Below are positions 44,859-50,874 of a DNA stretch of 64,000 nt, in pieces. The position numbers and the translations under genes were made by a program. Source of the stretch: Polymyxa betae A26-41. Lineage: Eukaryota; Protista; Endomyxa: Phytomyxea. The DNA lies in assembly GCA_003693705.1 (NCBI GenBank), contig RBZT01000633.1, positions 186,001 to 250,000 on the forward strand, read 5' to 3'. How positions within the stretch are numbered: the stretch's first letter is position 1; every line of letters starts with the position of its first letter. The notes under the pieces were generated by a model, which saw nothing but the letters and a program-made list of their open reading frames with translations, was not told where the DNA came from and made no database searches.

Positions 44859-45572
44859 ATGGACAATCACCGTCATGCGGTAAACATTCCCGAGGTCGTA
44901 CCCGACCACGATGACGAATTTCTCCGTGTGACTCATTCAGTAGGCTTCCCATCAGCATTCTCTGTCATGACCAAAGGCGAGCCCAGCTCTAACGACACTC
45001 GGACGAGACTGAAATCGAATAGCTGGCGAGATGAAGAGGTCCTGTATCTGAGTGAGCTTGGTGCTGACCCAGATCTGCGTAAAGATTGGGATCTAATTGC
45101 ACAGAAGATGAGCGCGAAATTTGGTACCAGTTATCGTACCAAGTATTTTCCAGCTACTATCAAACAGAGATGGTTCAAGCTTAATCCTCAGAAACCTAGA
45201 CCTTCACATCGTGATCCATATCTTGATTTTGTACAATCAGAGAACATACAGAATCATGAATCTATCATCACTCGAACACCTTACCATAGAGAAGAGCTCT
45301 CCTATCTAGCTGAGCTTATCCGAGATTTTGGACTCAGAGATTGGTCTCGTGTTGCACAACGTATGCAGCTGAAATTTGGTGACAAATATCGTCGTTATGC
45401 GCCAATGTCACTCTCCATGAAATGGGCTCGACTTCGTGCTAAGAATCAATTACCTCTGCCTCCCGTAAGTTATATTTCACAGTCTTCTTCAATCTCAGTT
45501 CCAGTCTTGCTTCTTGCAATGTGCTTGTTTTGTTTTTGGCATTGTGCTTTCGCATTTTGGCTCGTTAATTGA
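44859..45572 (+). CDS. Protein with two divergent Myb/SANT repeats
   Basis: SWRDEEVLYL...DWDLIAQKM...IKQRWFKL and PYHREELSYL...DWSRVAQRM...SMKWARL; 3' end may be spliced at GTAAGT 45465. Confidence 0.75.
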   Translation: MDNHRHAVNIPEVVPDHDDEFLRVTHSVGFPSAFSVMTKGEPSSNDTRTRLKSNSWRDEEVLYLSELGADPDLRKDWDLIAQKMSAKFGTSYRTKYFPATIKQRWFKLNPQKPRPSHRDPYLDFVQSENIQNHESIITRTPYHREELSYLAELIRDFGLRDWSRVAQRMQLKFGDKYRRYAPMSLSMKWARLRAKNQLPLPPVSYISQSSSISVPVLLLAMCLFCFWHCAFAFWLVN

Positions 45573-46638
45573 CGGCGGCACCTATAGCAATCAGAAATTG
45601 AAGGTTCTGCTGCGGAGATGGCTGTAGAGATAACAAAACCAGAGCCCGGTGCTTGAAATCTCATACAGTGATAATCCTCAACAACCAACTGGCGATACTC
45701 CGGTTGAAGACGCCGGTTAACTTCTTCAAACACCACCATTATCTTACCAATTTGAACGTTGTATGATTACCCATTTAGCAATGTTCTTCTTTCAATCTGT
45801 AGTCGCAAAATAAAGCCGGCTATCGATAGTTTTTAGGCCTATTACGACTGTGCCTCTGTTTTTTTCAATGTCTCAGGAAACCTTTTTTGACACAGATCTG
45901 ATAGTGAAATGATCTATTAGCAGTTTGCGACACTGGAAAGCCAGATTTTGATTACAGTCCTGCAATACTTCCCAAAATGAAATTGTGTTTTGGGTACCGC
46001 CGCCAACGTCAAAGATCGGTGTCACAGGTAGTCGCTGAAAGCTTCCAAGTTCCATGATTTGAAAGTTTCTGCTCGGTTGGTTGCGGAATCAGTAGACATT
46101 CCTTGCTGACCACGCGGTGAAGTCGATCATTAGCTGAGAGAGCTGGAATAAGATAGCGATCTATTGATGAAGAGGAATAGTGAATGATTAGCAAAGTGAG
46201 TTATGTTACAGACGAGTCTCTTGGGACCCACCTCATATTTTTGTCATAATTCATAACAACACTCTCTAGACTTTCATCTTGTCGTAATGCTGGAGACCAA
46301 TTCAGACCCAGCATCAATCGCTAAGCTATTCTCCAGAAGGCGCTACGATTCATTGGCAAAACGTATTCCGCTTCTCTATGTAATCCTTAAACAAACATTA
46401 GAAGCAATGCAGTGCAAGTTTCTCCAGACTGGGCCTCCATCTTTTTCTACCTTTGCTTTCGGCTATTAAAGAAATGAATCCTGTTTAGAAAACACTGTCT
46501 GGTTTATTGGCAGTAGACGTATTCCTAGCTGGACACAATCTGGCCAAAACCTATATCTAACTCAGCGCCTGTTTTTAGTACTTTCTGATCCCTCGATCGA
46601 GTTGTACATATCGAGTCAGCTGATGTCACCGGCGTCTA

Positions 46639-49600
46639 ATGGCGATGTTGCATGGCTGGTTACTCATCTTTATTTCTCTGACAGCATGTACACTAATCTG
46701 GTCCCAATCATCACCTCCGGCATCAGGATCTGAGTTGGTTCTATGGACATCTGCAGCTGTCACTGAATGGGTGACCATTCTGGCCAACAAATACCTATCC
46801 GACAAAGTCGATAGTCGAGTCACGTCGATACGAATTCTGGAGAGCACATATCCGCTTTTATTCAAGAACCTCATGGAGCGTGATCTCATCGACCTTCACA
46901 TTTATGCTATCAATCCAATGGTGCCGCATGATTTTACCTCAGACCAGGCTATATTGCCAGTTGCCTTGAATTCCATAGCTATCGCCGTTAATCTCCCGAA
47001 TATTACATCGCTGGCGCTGTCGACTGATGCAATTCTATCGATATTTAATGGGACATGCCCGACATGGAATCATTCTCTGATTCAACAAGACAACCCGAGC
47101 TTGGCTTTACCATCAGACTCAATTGTTCTCGTCAAGCGAGATGATCCGGCTGCGTCGACCAATGCGTTGTTATCGTTCTTTCAGGAATCATCCAGTTATT
47201 GGGACCAACGCTATGGAAATTCAATGCCTCACTTACCGAACGATATTTTCGCATCTAACATTAGTAGACTCATCGAAGAAACAGTTCGACACCAATATTC
47301 ATTAACGTATGCGACCGTCAACGCCTTCTCATCGACTTCGTTAACAGTGGTCCATTTCAAAAATCAGTTTGGATTGGTGGTATCTACTGATGATACATCA
47401 GTTGTGAAGGATTTTAAGGATTCTAATCATATTCCAGCGCTGACCAAGTTTGCATCCTGCCATTACCCACTCGCAATGGCTGTTATCATACAGATGCCTA
47501 AAATTACTGCCAATATGGATACGGCTGTGAAGCGGTCTCGATTTCTGCTTTGGATTATTGAAAAATTTCTAACCAAAACCGAGAACGTTGCCGACGACTT
47601 TGACCTAATTCCAATTATCGAAGCGAAACGTGATATGCTAATGCTGGATTCAGTTCAGGTCAAAGACCAATCTGACCAGCGTGTACTTCAGACTGTGCTA
47701 AATACAAGATCTTGTATGATTGGCCAGACGAGATCAGAAACCTCAGCGCCTGTATTTTATATCGATATTCTGAACCAGGTTCTACCAACATCTAGGTCAC
47801 CTTATATCGATACTACATGTTTGCCATGCCCATCTGGAACCTACAATATCGATCCGTTTTCGGGCATGTGCAACGAATGTCCAAAGCACGCAAGCTGCCC
47901 CGGTGGGCAGTACCTGTATGTGCCACAAGGCACCTGGGCTTATGTTTATACCGCTAATCAATCCACATTGGTCTGGGTGATCACATGCGAGCAGGACCTG
48001 CGGTCGTGCTGCCCTGATGACCATTGCAGGGTCGATCCGAACCCAGGATCCAGTACAACCTGTAGCGAGCTGTTCACTGGCCCGGGTTGTGGCCGATGCA
48101 TTCCTGGATATATTCCCTGGCTACGAACCTGTTATTCGTGTGATCTATCAGGTTTGGCTGTGGCTGCCCAGATTCTTGGCTTTATTATCATCTGTGTGAT
48201 CTTCTGTTTATTCGCCATGCTCGCCCCGCAAATGTCTGAAATGATCTACATTGAGACGTTTCTGTTTCATCTCCAAATCAGTATACGATTATTGCAAAAG
48301 ATGTCGTTGTGGTCGAAAGCGAATCGAACCTGGGTCCGAGAAGTTCTCATATATCTGGCTGGCTTCAGAATTTTTGATGATTCCAATCTATTAATGTTAC
48401 CTGCATTGAGCTGCCCATTCCAGTACGTCTGATAATCGGGCGTAAAATCGTATGGTTAACTGCTATTGTAGGAACAATCTCACTATGGTAGAAATTCTTT
48501 CACTCGTTTTAGCAATTGTATATTTCACGACCCCGACAGTATTAATTACAGTGATCGGGCCCTTCTGGCTAAATTCCAGAAAGAAATCGTCGTCTTTGGG
48601 CGAAAAATCCAATTCTTCAGCAGATGTTGGAGTATTTGTCGATCCTGACAGGTAGGCTGAGGCTTGCAACCCCAAATATTAATGCTGACATTTGCACTTG
48701 CTAGAGATCGTGCCTTTCTCAGGACCCTTTGTCTAAACGGGACATTTCGAATGTTTACGTTTGCTATGACACCTATACTGTATCGCTCACTATCGGCCAT
48801 GAACTGTATCGAGAACCCCATTGACGGCAGTAAGGTTCTATCATCAGCATTATCAGAGAAATGCTGGACTGAAGGACATCAACATCTCTATGTTCTGGCA
48901 GGCTGTATCATTTTCACGTTCGTCGTCATTTTTCCATTTCTTCTCAATCGAGAGATGACCAAACCTGAACACGTTCTGAATGCTCATGATCCTGCATATA
49001 ATCTGATGAGCCACATGAAGAAACGGTATCGAGTCTATCGGCCAGCAATCGTGGCAATCGATCACGTTCTGGAGAAGTATGTGGAATTCCTTTCTTAATA
49101 TCATCGATCTGATTACGAGTCTATAGATTTCTGATTCTATCGGCTCTGGTATTTGGATCACGGGATCCATATGCACTTACTTTCTCGTTCGGATTGTTGC
49201 TTCTCATTCGAATCAATTTCACATTCTATGCTCGCCACTATGATAACGTCTTGAGAGTCGGTTATTATTATCTAACTTGAGGCTGTTGTACTCAACTCCG
49301 ATTAAATAGATCTTATCAATACTCAGCTTGACTACAATCACTATGATTTCGCTTAGTGATGGATTTAAAGACTCATATAATGCCACATTGATGAGTATGC
49401 TTTTGGTAATGATATGTCCTATCATTTGTGCAGGAATGTGTATTGGCGAATATATTAACAGGTACATATCACTGCCGGAATATAAAGTTAAGCCCATGAA
49501 TTTTATAGGAGGAAGCTTCAGCATAAAATAGTTCCTGTGATAAAGAGGCATTTGGCAGTATACTCATCGACCAAGCCTTCAACAATTAGACCAAACAACT

Positions 49601-49653
49601 TCTCGATCATAACAAATTCAAGTGCTGGCAGAAGATACCCACATAATGGCTAA
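46639..49653 (+). CDS. Receptor-like protein: signal peptide, PstS-like type 2 periplasmic-binding domain, Cys-rich region, ~8-9 TM module
   Basis: LPVALNSIAIAVNLPN...LSTDAILSIFNGTCPTWNHSLIQQDNPSLALPSDSIVLVKRDD; CLPCPSGTY...CPKHASCPGG...GPGCGRCIPGY; hydrophobic helices across short introns to TAA at 49651. Confidence 0.8.
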
Positions 49654-49678
49654 AGTTTCTGCAGAAACGAGAACAAAT

Positions 49679-50874
49679 TTATTGCTTTGGTAGTGGTGAA
49701 AACTAGAACAATATAATATTGAATAAATGATAGGATATGAATAGGGCTGAGAATTGATACCTTGATAAGGAGATTACAGATATCAGTAAGGGTAATGAGA
49801 CCTTCAGGTTTTCCAGATGGATCTTCAATCCAGACATGATGTAATTTACTATTAGCCATACGAGCCATTAGAACTCCCAATGATTCAGTTGCTGATACTG
49901 ATACTGGAGTCAACGGATCCGAAACATGGCGTTTCAAGATATCGATGACTTTCTCAGAGAACATTCGAGCCAGCTCCTCTCCTAATTACAATCTTATTCA
50001 AACTTGGGGTATTGGCTTAGGCTCATGGCGTACCGAATCCTCTTAAATCTGATGGAGAGAAGTTGCCTACTAGACGACCTCCATGATCAACAATAGCTAG
50101 ACAAGAGACATGCTTCCTTGCCATTGTCTGAATGGCATCAGATAATGTGGCGCTGATGTCAATCGAGATCGGTTTTTTCGATGTAAAACCTGCAATGAAT
50201 GCAATCAGAATACGAATATTTAGTTAATGAGTATCAACTAACCCAGATCTGCTAAATGAACGTCACCAAATCGTTTCAATTCAGGAGTCTGAAATAGATT
50301 TCCAACAACATATCGATTAATATCAGATTGTGATACAATTGTATAACCGCGAGGATCATTTTCAAGTTTTACAATACAACGATGCATTCGACCAATACTT
50401 GATAGAAACTTAATCGCATCCAGAATTCGGCAACGTTCTTCGACTAAACAAAGCCATTCAGATTCCATACAGGCTGAGCTGGAATGATGACCTTGGAGAG
50501 GTGGCGATCCAGCAGCATTAACAACCTTCTCCAAAGTGGTATTCATCGCTTCTTCACGATCTGGTCGGGTTGCAAGAAATAATAGCAGATCGTGATAGGA
50601 TACAAGAGCAATCCATTGAATCATGCCCAGATCGTTGGGTTTCATAACCGGCGCCGACTAAAGATGATGTTAAGAAATAACTGAGATCGATCTTGGCGAT
50701 AATTACCAGAACGCGGGCTCGTGATAATGTTTGAAATGCAGAGGCGACAGTTGACATATAATGTAGAACGGTAATATTACGATGTTGTGGGATACAGGCT
50801 GATATAGGAGCATGCAGGATATCATCCATTGGTTGATAAGCGGCACGACCTTCACCATCATTATGCACAGGCAT
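49679..50874 (-). CDS. Multi-CBS-domain protein (AMPK-gamma/Sds23-like)
   Basis: IVSQSDI, VSCLAIVDHGGRLVGNFSPSDLRG, LHHVWIEDPSGKPEGLITLTDI. Confidence 0.85.

What the first reader, a model, noticed from the sequence alone, without database searches (positions are those of the whole stretch)
46639..49653. Eukaryotic receptor-like gene built from a bacterial PstS-type binding domain, a Cys-rich linker and a multi-TM module
Seen: a signal peptide, then ~280 aa following the PstS pattern (hydrophobic strand, N-L-P, LS...I..IF.G...W....I...NP.L.LP...I..V.R.D), then CxxCPxGTY/CPxxAxCPGG/GxxCxxCxxGY repeats and ~8-9 hydrophobic helices. The PstS phosphate-binding loop R-x-D-G-S-G-T reads KRDDPAAST, so the ligand may no longer be phosphate. 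The first ~1.8 kb has no introns, unlike most genes in the window. Known: class C GPCRs use the same logic (binding domain + Cys-rich domain + TM bundle) with a type 1 PBP. Inference: an independently assembled nutrient or host-cue sensor (receptor or ligand-gated channel) made from a horizontally acquired type 2 PBP.
Basis: partly seen in the sequence, partly recalled or inferred. Interest (0 to 1): 0.82.

Follow-up and report, generated by a model that had tools for sequence, protein, structure and literature searches.

The report
PstS-domain receptor with TRP-like membrane module
A root-parasitic protist (very probably Polymyxa betae) expresses one spliced gene for a surface protein that joins a degenerate bacterial-type phosphate-binding domain, a cysteine-rich stalk and a nine-helix membrane module; the module belongs to a widespread, unstudied eukaryotic receptor-like family, so the gene is real and interesting but not a one-off invention.

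Summary
Window 46639-49653 (+) is one six-exon gene of about 920 aa. Spliced RNA-derived contigs from two studies confirm the introns, and the gene is collinear with a 907-aa Plasmodiophora brassicae protein.

- **Ectodomain:** residues ~30-343 are a PstS-type (type 2) binding domain by sequence (PDB PstS E 2.8e-8) and by model (Foldseek E 8e-21, TM 0.8). Only 3 of 9 phosphate-site positions survive, and none survive in the P. brassicae orthologue.
- **Stalk:** a Cys-rich region follows, of the Ephrin_rec_like/DUF7630-31 kind.
- **Membrane part:** about nine helices follow. This is not a class C GPCR, since there is no 7tm_3 match and no GPCR fold match. It has no solved relative. It sits at the edge of Pfam PF06011, the fungal Pkd2/Flc "TRP-like" putative Ca2+ channels.

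The same stalk and membrane chassis occurs across eukaryotes with other ectodomains: ANF_receptor, OpuAC, LRR, beta-helix and 4x PstS. PstS ectodomains also sit on class C GPCRs (published for P. brassicae and a chytrid) and on animal receptor guanylate cyclases. Recent horizontal acquisition and unique assembly are therefore not shown.

Most likely it is a surface sensor coupled to ion flux, with a ligand that is no longer canonical phosphate. I rate it a new variant of a known kind. Another window of this scan noted the same stretch before.

The parts
46639..48422 (+). Exon 1 (1784 nt, no intron). It encodes the signal peptide, PstS-like domain, linker, Cys-rich stalk, TM helix 1, helix 2 and the conserved LPxxSC loop.
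   Evidence: ORF; donor GT at 48423 seen as a joint in contigs of X2 and X6; aligns to P0152 residues 90-574.
46639..46704 (+). Signal peptide, aa 1-22 (MAMLHGWLLIFISLTACTLIWS).
   Evidence: Hydropathy peak 1.93 at the N-terminus. The P. brassicae orthologue also starts with a hydrophobic segment. No dedicated signal-peptide predictor was available.
46726..47667 (+). PstS-type (type 2) periplasmic-binding-protein fold, aa ~30-343, with a degraded phosphate site. R167, D169 and S173 are kept; the T10, S38, D56, S139 and G140 equivalents are replaced by A, Y, A, A, A.
   Evidence: Pfam PF12849 E 2e-5; PDB PstS E 2.8e-8; model pLDDT 83.6; Foldseek top 20 all PstS, E 8e-21, TM 0.80-0.83 by target; site table.
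47134..47160 (+). KRDDPAAST, aa 166-174: the remnant of the R-S-D-x-S-G-T-T phosphate loop.
   Evidence: Alignment A1. R is kept in 61 of 62 other rows and here, but is V in the P. brassicae orthologue.
47815..48141 (+). Cys-rich stalk, aa ~393-501 (14 Cys), of the Ephrin_rec_like / DUF7630-DUF7631 kind.
   Evidence: Weak Pfam hits PF24634 E 0.044 and PF07699 E 0.24. Invariant or near-invariant Cys columns across 20 relatives (A2). 12 of 26 relatives hit DUF7630, best 3.3e-10.
48154..48222 (+). Membrane helix 1 (LAVAAQILGFIIICVIFCLFAML).
   Evidence: Hydropathy 2.89; aligns to helix 134-156 of the orthologue's model.
48472..48651 (+). Exon 2: one membrane helix (MVEILSLVLAIVYFTTPTVLITVIGPFWL) followed by a basic, Ser-rich loop.
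   Evidence: Joints 48422>48472 and 48651>48705 in X2 and X6; tblastn to P0152 583-637; hydropathy.
48705..49076 (+). Exon 3: an amphipathic helix, a loop with two conserved Cys (NC...EKC), a membrane helix (LYVLAGCIIFTFVVIFPFLL), a basic loop, and the start of the next helix.
   Evidence: Joints; 37% identity to P0152 637-761; profile A2 hits this exon at E 2.4e-11 in the own-genome search.
49127..49256 (+). Exon 4: the end of one membrane helix, another helix (YALTFSFGLLLLIRINF), and the YARHYDN motif (family motif PY..DN).
   Evidence: Joints; tblastn; alignments A2 and A3.
49310..49461 (+). Exon 5: the last two membrane helices (ILSILSLTTITMISL; TLMSMLLVMICPIICAGMCIGEYI).
   Evidence: Joint 49256>49310 in X2 and X6; translation; tblastn to P0152 837-867.
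49462..49508 (+). Intron 5 (47 nt, GT..AG). It is spliced in the X6 contig and retained in the X2 contig. Retention gives an alternative stop at 49529-49531.
   Evidence: table 5; sequence.
49509..49653 (+). Exon 6: a basic cytosolic tail (RKLQHKIVPVIKRHLAVYSSTKPSTIRPNN...) ending in TAA at 49651-49653.
   Evidence: Translation. It resembles the basic tail of P0152 (HRHRVVRRRVGPSKQAPTIVPSTRS; sequence).

Best explanation
SHOWN. This is one expressed six-exon gene of a plasmodiophorid; the assembly statistics match the Polymyxa betae draft. It encodes a ~920-aa protein built, in order, from:
- a signal peptide;
- one PstS-fold (type 2 PBP) ectodomain whose canonical phosphate-ligating residues are mostly replaced;
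- a disulfide-rich stalk;
- about nine membrane helices;
- a short basic tail.

The stalk and membrane part is a member of a large, uncharacterised, pan-eukaryotic family. In that family the same chassis carries many different ectodomains. The family sits just below threshold of Pfam PF06011, the fungal Pkd2/Flc 'TRP-like' proteins. PF06011 proteins have the same overall plan: signal peptide, ectodomain, 9 TM helices, cytosolic tail.

INFERRED. The protein sits in the plasma membrane with the PBP clamshell outside. Closure or opening of the clamshell, on a ligand or a contact, is passed through the rigid Cys-rich stalk to the nine-helix module. That module changes ion (probably Ca2+) permeability or another membrane signal, by analogy with stretch-activated Ca2+ permeability reported for S. 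pombe Pkd2.

Relatives with the same plan (Chromosphaera 4x PstS) keep the complete phosphate site, whereas the two plasmodiophorid orthologues do not and differ from each other. The ligand here is therefore probably not orthophosphate bound in the canonical way. It is either a changed, unknown ligand or the domain has become a ligand-independent ectodomain.
For: Gene and transcript
- Spliced contigs of two studies remove introns 1-4, and X6 also removes intron 5, in one continuous record from exon 1 to the last exon.
- All exons are collinear with P. brassicae SPR01933.1 (P0152, 907 aa).

PstS fold
-.

Degraded site
- the window keeps R, D and S of 9 positions; P0152 keeps none; Chromosphaera domain 3 keeps all 9.

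Chassis family
- Residues 391-593 hit proteins with ANF_receptor, OpuAC, Chlam_PMP/beta-helix and TIG ectodomains.
- The full module aligns with conserved Cys and motifs.
- hmmsearch with the A2 profile gives E 1e-14 to 1e-34 for the rows that were not used to build the profile.
- Own-genome paralogues exist.
- ESM Atlas finds the same predicted fold (TM 0.60-0.76 by query) in cnidarian, sponge, green-algal, haptophyte and ciliate clusters carrying LRR, PMP, Ephrin_rec_like and TIR.

Link to PF06011
- P0008 scores 27.7 bits against a cut-off of 28.5 (E 1.6e-6).
- P0147 scores E 2.4e-5.
- 4 of 26 module sequences hit, best 5.2e-6.
- Two own-genome paralogues hit at E 1.2e-4 and 2.8e-4.
- An Atlas cluster labelled TRP scores 0.92 with 210 shared features.
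- Pkd2's plan of signal peptide, ectodomain, 9 TM and tail is given in bioRxiv 10.1101/2022.08.11.503631; its stretch-activated Ca2+ permeability is in the abstract of PMC9727806.
Against: - No exon of the window gene itself hits PF06011, and every PF06011 hit in relatives is below the curated cut-off.
- The membrane module has no solved relative, so channel function is pure analogy.
- PF06011 proteins themselves are only 'putative' channels. Some (Flc) are discussed as flavin or haem carriers.
- The ectodomain site is not conserved between the two orthologues (28% identity overall). This fits relaxed constraint as well as a new ligand.
- The ectodomain model was built from an alignment made of PstS relatives, which favours that fold.
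- The membrane model is of the P. brassicae orthologue, not of the window protein. The joined spliced protein was not submitted to any tool, by rule.
- Localisation, topology and ligand are untested.
Confidence: 0.55

Rival explanations
1. It is a class C GPCR-like receptor: a PBP ectodomain, a Cys-rich domain and a seven-helix G-protein-coupled bundle. This is what is known for PBP_like_2 + 7tm_3 proteins of P. brassicae and chytrids.
For: - Same order of parts.
- PstS + 7tm_3 proteins exist: P0046 of P. brassicae, P0052 of Calcarisporiella, P0084. They are published in PMC4815078 and PMC3251606.
- Stalk domains of relatives weakly hit NCD3G. The own-genome paralogue reaches 48.4 bits against a cut-off of 38.9.
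- An own-genome 7tm_3 receptor also carries Ephrin_rec_like.
Against: - There is no 7tm_3 hit in exon 1, in later exons or in the orthologue, although 7tm_3 is easily found elsewhere in this genome at E 1e-35.
- There are about nine helices, not seven.
- Foldseek and VIA-align give no significant GPCR match; class B GPCRs appear only at E 0.3-0.9 with TM 0.1.
Confidence: 0.04
2. It is a lineage-specific invention. A bacterial pstS gene was transferred into the plasmodiophorid ancestor and fused there to a resident Cys-rich/TM gene.
For: - It is the only PF12849 match in this genome, and there is no paralogue of the ectodomain.
- The first exon is long and intron-free.
- In the membrane-module tree the plasmodiophorid protein lies nearest chytrid modules that carry ANF_receptor or OpuAC, not with the 4x PstS proteins of Entosiphon and Chromosphaera. 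PstS may therefore have been joined to this chassis more than once.
- Rolfe et al. proposed HGT for the PBP/SBP domains of P. brassicae receptors.
Against: - In the PBP-domain tree the pair window + P. brassicae sits among eukaryotic receptor PstS domains, apart from the 34 single-domain proteins (2 label changes against 23.8 expected).
- The nearest rows are euglenid and ichthyosporean domains.
- Both trees are weakly supported with long branches, and the taxonomy of the single-domain set is assumed, not known.
- An intron-free 939-aa paralogue without any PBP shows that long exons are normal for this family.
- Composition is ordinary: GC 0.44 against 0.38-0.48 across the window.
Confidence: 0.15
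3. It is a solute importer rather than a sensor. The PBP domain captures a nutrient and hands it to the multi-helix module, which translocates it. This is the 'novel transporter' reading that Rolfe et al. gave to PBP/SBP fusions in P. brassicae.
For: - PstS proteins normally feed transporters.
- Some PF06011 members (yeast Flc) have been linked to flavin transport; see the abstract of PMC9600462.
- An obligate biotroph needs host nutrients.
Against: - The binding site is degraded and not conserved between orthologues. This is unexpected for a nutrient-capture protein.
- The module shows no similarity to any solved transporter fold.
- The same chassis carries LRR, beta-helix, TIG and TIR parts, which are recognition or signalling domains, not nutrient binders.
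Confidence: 0.12
4. It is a ligand-blind relic. The PBP fold is kept only as a structural ectodomain, for folding, trafficking or adhesion. The protein acts like fungal Pkd2, for example in membrane-tension sensing, without any chemical cue.
For: - Five of the eight phosphate-ligating positions are replaced here, and all are replaced in P. brassicae, including the otherwise near-invariant Arg (61 of 62 rows).
- Orthologues share only 28% identity.
- The Pkd2 ectodomain is essential for trafficking rather than shown to bind a ligand.
Against: - The fold is confidently retained in both species: pLDDT above 90 over most of the domain, and Pfam hits in both.
- Relatives with other intact PBPs suggest that ligand control is the family's theme.
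Confidence: 0.14

Closest known systems
Plasmodiophora brassicae SPR01933.1 / UniRef A0A3P3YP56, 'PBP domain-containing protein' (907 aa; P0152)
   Same: It is the orthologue. It has the same order of parts, is collinear with all six exons, and shares 28% identity over 513 residues in exon 1 and 37% in exon 3.
   Different: It is only an automatic annotation, with no study behind it. Its phosphate loop is even more degraded (no Arg). GC content and sequence are strongly diverged.
PBP_like_2 / SBP_bac_1 + 7tm_3 fusions of P. brassicae (Rolfe et al. 2016, PMC4815078) and the PBP_like_2 class C GPCR of the chytrid Spizellomyces (SPPG_06488; Krishnan et al. 2012, PMC3251606)
   Same: A eukaryotic membrane receptor with a PstS-type ectodomain. 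They are found in the sister plasmodiophorid and follow the same idea of a bacterial-type binding domain on a eukaryotic membrane module.
   Different: Their membrane part is a 7tm_3 GPCR bundle. Here it is an unrelated ~9-helix module preceded by a DUF7630/Ephrin_rec_like stalk. No PstS + 7tm_3 gene was detected in this genome.
Multi-PstS + DUF7630 + TRP-like proteins of Entosiphon sulcatum (P0002, P0003) and Chromosphaera perkinsii (P0008)
   Same: The same three kinds of part in the same order. They are the best overall hits of the exhaustive search, at E 4e-31.
   Different: They carry four tandem PstS domains, some with a complete phosphate site, and are much longer (1534-2386 aa). Their membrane modules are not the nearest to the plasmodiophorid one in the module tree, though support is weak.
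Fungal PF06011 'TRP-like' proteins (S. pombe Pkd2, Trp663, Trp1322; yeast Flc1-3; Aspergillus TrpR; Cryptococcus Flc1)
   Same: The same overall plan: signal peptide, extracellular domain, nine membrane helices, cytosolic tail. Relatives of the window protein give repeated sub-threshold PF06011 hits over profile positions ~235-420.
   Different: Their ectodomain is an Ig/ML-like lipid-binding domain, not a PBP plus Cys-rich stalk. No hit reaches the Pfam cut-off, and the window's own exons give none. Homology is probable, not proven.
Class C GPCRs, ionotropic glutamate receptors and receptor guanylate cyclases (PBP-gated eukaryotic receptors)
   Same: The working principle: a clamshell binding domain outside controls a membrane or cytosolic effector. 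PstS-ectodomain guanylate cyclases exist in Owenia and Tubulanus.
   Different: The membrane or effector modules differ. The classic examples use type 1 PBPs (ANF_receptor) or the iGluR LBD, not PstS.
Bacterial PstS (E. coli 1IXH, Y. pestis 2Z22, M. tuberculosis PstS-3 4LVQ)
   Same: Fold and detectable sequence homology.
   Different: 15-18% identity. It is not a soluble or lipoprotein partner of PstCAB but is fused to a membrane module. 5 of the 8 ligand positions are replaced.

Membership tests
PstS / PBP_like_2 (PF12849), type 2 periplasmic binding fold | Significant sequence similarity to family members or the family profile | tested here: met
   phmmer against PDB finds 17 PstS chains, best E 2.8e-8. 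The exhaustive search finds 1169 hits, mostly PstS-like. The Pfam score of 24.9 bits is just under the 27-bit cut-off. The six-frame genome search reports 26.5 bits, or 27 with neighbours.
PstS / PBP_like_2 (PF12849), type 2 periplasmic binding fold | Two-lobed type 2 PBP fold superposable on PstS | tested here: met
   Model pLDDT 83.6. The Foldseek top 20 are all PstS/PhoX, E down to 8e-21, TM 0.77-0.83 by target over ~330 columns. Caveat: the alignment used for the model consisted of PstS relatives.
PstS / PBP_like_2 (PF12849), type 2 periplasmic binding fold | Phosphate-ligating residues (E. coli T10, F11, S38, D56, R135, S139, G140, T141, plus D137; numbering from established knowledge) | tested here: not met
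   The window has A, A, Y, A, R, A, A, S and D137=D. Only R167, D169 and S173 are compatible. The orthologue P0152 keeps none.
PstS / PBP_like_2 (PF12849), type 2 periplasmic binding fold | Works with a PstCAB ABC importer | tested here: not met
   The domain is covalently fused to a stalk and a nine-helix module in a spliced eukaryotic gene. No pstC or pstA lies beside it (ORFs; Pfam scan of neighbouring ORFs).
Class C GPCR (7tm_3, PF00003) | 7tm_3 seven-helix bundle | tested here: not met
   There is no PF00003 hit in exon 1, the later exons or P0152. The same model finds five other loci in this genome, best E 2.5e-36. There is no GPCR fold match.
Class C GPCR (7tm_3, PF00003) | Venus-flytrap ectodomain plus Cys-rich (NCD3G) linker | tested here: inconclusive
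   The ectodomain is a PBP, but type 2. The stalk of the window protein hits Ephrin_rec_like and DUF7631 only weakly. NCD3G is hit by relatives and by the own-genome paralogue.
PF06011 'TRP-like' (Pkd2/Flc) family | Profile match above the curated cut-off (28.5 bits) | tested here: not met
   The window exons give no hit at E<=1, and P0152 gives none. Relatives are sub-threshold: 27.7 bits for P0008, 23.8 for P0147, 24.4 and 23.5 for own-genome paralogues.
PF06011 'TRP-like' (Pkd2/Flc) family | Signal peptide, extracellular domain, nine membrane helices, cytosolic tail | tested here: met
   Hydropathy and the model of the orthologue give ~9 helices with basic loops on alternate sides and a basic tail. 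Topology is inferred, not measured.
PF06011 'TRP-like' (Pkd2/Flc) family | N-terminal ML/Ig-like TRP_N domain | tested here: not met
   The ectodomain is PstS-like plus a Cys-rich stalk. No TRP_N hit was found.
PF06011 'TRP-like' (Pkd2/Flc) family | Ca2+-permeable or mechanosensitive channel activity | not testable with these tools
   This needs electrophysiology or reconstitution.
Uncharacterised eukaryotic 'Cys-rich stalk (DUF7630/DUF7631/Ephrin_rec_like) + ~9-TM module' family | Conserved Cys pattern C..C..GTY...C..CP..A.CPGG...GYW...C...CC...C..G..G..C..C...C..C directly before helix 1 | tested here: met
   Alignment A2 has six invariant Cys columns and eleven nearly invariant columns (seven of them Cys); the window row carries the pattern.
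Uncharacterised eukaryotic 'Cys-rich stalk (DUF7630/DUF7631/Ephrin_rec_like) + ~9-TM module' family | Homologous membrane module (F.Q helix, L..P...C loop, C...C loop, PY..DN motif) | tested here: met
   The exhaustive search hits residues 386-593 in 13 listed proteins. Profile A2 finds window exons 1 and 3 at E 2.4e-62 and 2.4e-11. Atlas matches by shape give TM 0.60-0.76.
Canonical TRP / voltage-gated-like 6-TM tetrameric channels | S1-S6 fold with a pore loop | tested here: not met
   No TRP, polycystin or VGIC chain appears among the Foldseek or VIA-align matches. A weak or missing match is not proof of a different fold.

The most novel reading that the evidence does not exclude
The nine-helix module, distantly related to fungal Pkd2/Flc, is the common output part of a pan-eukaryotic and so far unrecognised class of surface receptors or ligand-gated channels. 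Its ectodomains are swapped like cassettes: type 1 and type 2 PBPs, LRR, beta-helix, TIG. The plasmodiophorid PstS version, with a rebuilt pocket that differs between P. betae and P. brassicae, would then be a host- or rhizosphere-cue sensor tuned to each parasite's host.
Probability: 0.25. Interest if true: 0.8.

Novelty: new variant of a known kind. Interest (0 to 1): 0.55.

Why it matters
Clamshell binding domains controlling a membrane effector are a textbook principle, seen in class C GPCRs, iGluRs and natriuretic-peptide receptors. Here the effector is a different, structurally unsolved nine-helix module.

That module's only studied relatives, fungal Pkd2/Flc, are 'putative' channels whose gating stimulus is debated. 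Family members with intact, well-understood binding domains would give a defined chemical handle to test whether this module is a gated channel. Candidates are PstS with a full phosphate site in Chromosphaera, and OpuAC or ANF_receptor in chytrids.

Plasmodiophorids are unculturable root parasites, and Polymyxa betae transmits rhizomania virus. For them, surface sensors of zoospores are almost unknown. A single-copy, expressed receptor conserved between Polymyxa and Plasmodiophora is a concrete candidate.

The finding also corrects two published or implied views:
- PBP-receptor fusions are not unique to P. brassicae.
- They need not be recent gene transfers.

Tried and rejected
- **Word-index search with exon 1.** It gave only one bacterial PstA-PstS fusion, which was uninformative. 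That is why the exhaustive search was used.
- **Word-index search with the orthologue's residues 360-907.** No hit.
- **Word-index search with profile A2.** Only 7 hits, which were used to deepen alignment A3.
- **Raw RNA runs X11 and X16.** Zero reads were laid, so they are no test of expression. The evidence comes from the spliced Logan contigs of X2 and X6, whose library type is not on record. I infer they are RNA-derived because introns are removed.
- **Foldseek against PDB with the membrane module.** Best E 0.17.
- **VIA-align over 48,161 chains.** Best Z 6.7, spectrin or HRD1-like helical matches that I regard as non-specific.
- **PDB profile search with A3.** Nothing below E 0.2.
- **Paper searches.** DUF7630/DUF7631 gave 0 papers. 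'PstS + Plasmodiophora' gave irrelevant hits. Ephrin_rec_like + transmembrane helices gave 1 irrelevant paper. The supplements of Rolfe et al. had no term hits, so I could not tell whether the orthologue is among their eight 'transporters'.
- **Bacterial contamination of the binned assembly.** Considered and rejected: the gene has five confirmed spliceosomal introns and a plasmodiophorid orthologue.
- **Two fused gene models.** Considered and rejected: the contigs are continuous, the introns are in frame, and the gene is collinear with the orthologue.
- **Joined spliced protein.** Exons were used by reference, and the P. brassicae orthologue served as proxy for the membrane module.
- None occurred.

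Full report
**1. What is in the sequence**

An ATG-initiated open frame runs from 46639 to a TGA at 48430-48432 (597 aa). It opens with a hydrophobic signal-like segment, aa 1-22.

- Pfam places PBP_like_2 (PF12849) on aa 106-278 at E 2e-5, 24.9 bits, just below the 27-bit cut-off.
- phmmer against all PDB chains finds 17 PstS proteins and essentially nothing else. The best is M. tuberculosis PstS-3 at E 2.8e-8.
- A strongly hydrophobic helix follows at aa ~505-530.

**2. Gene model and transcript**

From the sequence I predicted GT..AG introns at 48423-48471, 48652-48704, 49077-49126 and 49257-49309, each keeping the frame.

tblastn with the Plasmodiophora brassicae protein found later shows that all the downstream hydrophobic ORFs are collinear with one 907-aa protein.

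Laying public runs on 46300-49800 gave the decisive evidence. One 4615-nt contig of run X2 covers 46300 (and 36 nt beyond) to past 49800 with exactly these four introns removed. A 2877-nt contig of X6, from another study and year, removes the same four plus a fifth, 49462-49508.

The library type of these runs is not on record. I infer from intron removal that they are RNA-derived.

With intron 5 removed, the frame runs to TAA at 49651-49653. With intron 5 retained (X2) the protein ends at 49529-49531.

Both contigs run on into the convergent minus-strand CBS-domain gene, whose own intron (49703-49760, CT..AC) is also removed. The two genes therefore overlap tail to tail, and the assembler merged them. 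This does not affect the continuity from exon 1 to exon 6.

The two raw RNA runs I chose (X11, X16) gave no reads and are no test.

Exons were used by reference.

**3. The organism**

G000 has 27,085,814 bases in 1001 contigs. The Polymyxa betae draft is described as 1,001 contigs and 27,085,946 bp with 45.1% GC (PMC6328671). The only close relative of the protein is from Plasmodiophora brassicae.

The window is therefore very probably from P. betae, an obligate root endoparasite of beet. That assembly was binned from a metagenome. However, five confirmed spliceosomal introns and a plasmodiophorid orthologue exclude a bacterial contaminant.

**4. The ectodomain**

I modelled aa 1-385 with an alignment of 68 sequences (A1). 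The model has mean pLDDT 83.6, with more than 90 over most of aa 30-340.

The first twenty Foldseek matches in the PDB are all PstS/PhoX: E 8e-21 to 3e-14, TM 0.73-0.83 by target, ~330 aligned columns. The caveat is that the alignment consisted of PstS relatives.

I located the nine positions that make the PstS phosphate site in alignment A1. The residue numbers come from established knowledge of E. coli PstS.

| Site (E. coli) | Window | Kept? |
|---|---|---|
| T10 | A | no |
| F11 | A | no |
| S38 | Y | no |
| D56 | A | no |
| R135 | R167 | yes |
| D137 | D169 | yes |
| S139 | A | no |
| G140 | A | no |
| T141 | S173 | conservative |

- The P. brassicae orthologue keeps none. It has V in place of the Arg that 61 of 62 other rows keep.
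- The third PstS domain of the Chromosphaera protein keeps all nine.

The canonical phosphate pocket is gone in both plasmodiophorids, and the two differ from each other.

**5. Relatives and the chassis**

The word-index search found almost nothing, so I ran the exhaustive search. It gave 1169 hits at E<=1e-3, in two classes.

*(a) PstS-like domains.* Beside single-domain proteins these include eukaryotic receptors:
- four tandem PstS domains + DUF7630 + a weak PF06011 match, in Entosiphon sulcatum and Chromosphaera perkinsii;
- PstS + 7tm_3 in P. brassicae (PBRA_005806) and the fungus Calcarisporiella;
- PstS + one helix + kinase-like + guanylate cyclase, in the annelid Owenia and the nemertean Tubulanus.

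*(b) Hits to aa 386-593, the stalk plus first helices.* These lie in proteins of ~700-1700 aa whose N-terminal parts are ANF_receptor (a chytrid 'GABA-B receptor'), OpuAC (chytrids), Chlam_PMP/beta-helix, or TIG/FG-GAP.

Aligning the C-terminal ~550 residues of these proteins (A2, A3) shows a common module:
- a fixed Cys pattern;
- helix 1;
- an 'F.Q' helix;
- an L..P...C loop;
- further helices, with a two-Cys loop and a PY..DN motif.

A profile of this module finds more members among the session's proteins. In the window's own genome it finds at least five other loci. One of these is an intron-free 939-aa ORF on contig C934 with seven Ephrin_rec_like repeats, NCD3G, DUF7630 and a weak PF06011 match.

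The ESM Atlas holds clusters with the same predicted shape (TM 0.60-0.76 by query). They come from cnidarians, sponges, green algae, haptophytes, ciliates and Perkinsozoa, and carry LRR, Chlam_PMP, Ephrin_rec_like, START or TIR parts.

The stalk and module is therefore a pan-eukaryotic chassis with exchangeable ectodomains.

**6. What the membrane module is**

The orthologue's residues 355-907, modelled with A3, give pLDDT 78.5 and pTM 0.78. The model has a beta-rich Cys domain and about nine long helices.

From hydropathy, basic loops and conserved Cys-bearing loops I infer this topology: N-terminus outside, nine helices, tail inside.

It is not a class C GPCR:
- No 7tm_3 match occurs anywhere in the gene or its orthologue.
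- The same Pfam model finds five other loci in this genome, best E 2.5e-36.

It has no solved relative:
- Foldseek best E 0.17.
- VIA-align best Z 6.7, on non-specific helical proteins.
- PDB profile search: nothing.

The only named family at its edge is PF06011 'TRP'. All matches are below the 28.5-bit cut-off:

| Sequence | Score or E-value |
|---|---|
| P0008 | 27.7 bits |
| P0147 | E 2.4e-5 |
| 4 of 26 module sequences | best 5.2e-6 |
| Two own-genome paralogues | E 1.2e-4 and 2.8e-4 |
| Atlas 'TRP' cluster | feature score 0.92 |

PF06011 proteins such as S. pombe Pkd2 have the same plan: signal peptide, extracellular domain, nine helices, cytosolic tail. They also lack an experimental structure (bioRxiv 10.1101/2022.08.11.503631). 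Pkd2 is reported to become Ca2+-permeable on membrane stretch (PMC9727806 abstract).

I regard remote homology as probable, at roughly two in three. It is not proven. The window's own exons give no PF06011 hit.

**7. Origin**

*PBP-domain tree.* I built a quick maximum-likelihood tree of 71 PstS domains.
- It pairs the window domain with the P. brassicae one (SH-aLRT 86; both are long branches).
- It places them among the eukaryotic receptor domains, apart from the 34 single-domain proteins.
- The label 'eukaryotic receptor' needs 2 changes, against 23.8 in shuffles.

*Membrane-module tree*. It puts the plasmodiophorid module nearest the chytrid modules that carry ANF_receptor or OpuAC, not with the 4x PstS proteins.

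Both trees are weakly supported, and the taxonomy of the single-domain set is assumed. Together they fit cassette swapping of binding domains on an old eukaryotic chassis better than a recent bacterial transfer into plasmodiophorids. Neither is excluded.

This gene is the only PF12849 match in the genome. P. brassicae is published to have several PBP_like_2 + 7tm3 genes, which Rolfe et al. called transporters 'unique to P. brassicae' and likely HGT (PMC4815078). Krishnan et al. had already listed a PBP_like_2 class C GPCR in a chytrid (PMC3251606).

**8. How it most likely works**

*Shown:* the parts, their order, expression, and the degraded pocket.

*Inferred:* a plasma-membrane sensor in which the state of the clamshell is passed through the disulfide-rich stalk to the nine-helix module, which alters ion (probably Ca2+) flux. 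The ligand is not orthophosphate bound in the canonical way.

Rivals:

| Reading | Confidence |
|---|---|
| Ligand-blind relic acting like Pkd2 | 0.14 |
| Nutrient importer | 0.12 |
| Lineage-specific HGT fusion (concerns origin, not mechanism) | 0.15 |
| Class C GPCR | 0.04 |

**9. Verdict**

Novelty is a new variant of a known kind. It is a PBP-ectodomain receptor whose membrane part is a non-GPCR, PF06011-like nine-helix module. I found no paper on that module with such ectodomains. The family is visible in databases only as DUF7630/DUF7631 and 'hypothetical protein'.

Interest is 0.55. It is still above ordinary, because the family offers a direct way to test what PF06011-like modules do.

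Noticed in passing
window 49462-49508: A fifth 47-nt GT..AG intron is spliced in the X6 contig but retained in the X2 contig. Retention swaps the basic 48-aa cytosolic tail for a 22-aa end (stop at 49529-49531). This may be a regulated isoform or an unprocessed transcript.
   Followed up: partly
window 49650-49964 (-) and on to ~50645: A convergent CBS-domain gene (Pfam CBS E 7.7e-7) ends at 49650, inside the last codons of the receptor gene, whose stop is at 49651-49653. RNA contigs of both runs merge the two genes, and the CBS gene's intron 49703-49760 is spliced. The 3' ends therefore overlap tail to tail.
   Followed up: partly
G000:C934:29486-52442 (loci L003-L005, L010, L012, L013, L021, L022): A cluster of paralogues of the Cys-rich stalk and nine-helix module lies on one contig. 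It includes an intron-free 939-aa ORF with seven Ephrin_rec_like repeats, NCD3G (48 bits), DUF7630 and a weak PF06011 match, plus a second copy at 47316-49122 with stops or introns. Further copies lie on C674, C846 (two) and C630.
   Followed up: partly
L020 = G000:C620:69500-79499 (and L015): Two tandem class C GPCR genes (7tm_3 at E 1e-35) have ectodomains of Laminin_G_3 plus Ephrin_rec_like instead of a PBP. They are flanked by shorter Laminin_G_3-only ORFs. This looks like another modular receptor set in this genome.
   Followed up: partly
P0019, P0136 (also P0059, P0070, P0107): Receptor guanylate cyclases of an annelid (Owenia fusiformis) and a nemertean (Tubulanus polymorphus) carry a PstS-type (PBP_like_2) ectodomain where vertebrate receptor cyclases have ANF_receptor. 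One is annotated 'retinal guanylyl cyclase 2-like'.
   Followed up: no
whole genome G000: The assembly statistics (1001 contigs, 27,085,814 bases) match the published Polymyxa betae draft (1,001 contigs, 27,085,946 bp), a metagenome-binned assembly. Intron-less, bacterial-looking genes in it need a contamination check.
   Followed up: partly
window 44859-45572 (+): The upstream ORF of 237 aa has weak Myb/SANT matches (E 1.4e-4) and a hydrophobic C-terminus. Another note of the scan (s1-675047) already covers it.
   Followed up: no
P0043 (2699 aa, metagenomic), P0138, P0082: Very long proteins carry three or four near-identical PstS domains, interleaved with Kelch propellers in P0043. In the tree they nest within the single-domain, presumably prokaryotic, PstS set. 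Their origin is unknown.
   Followed up: no
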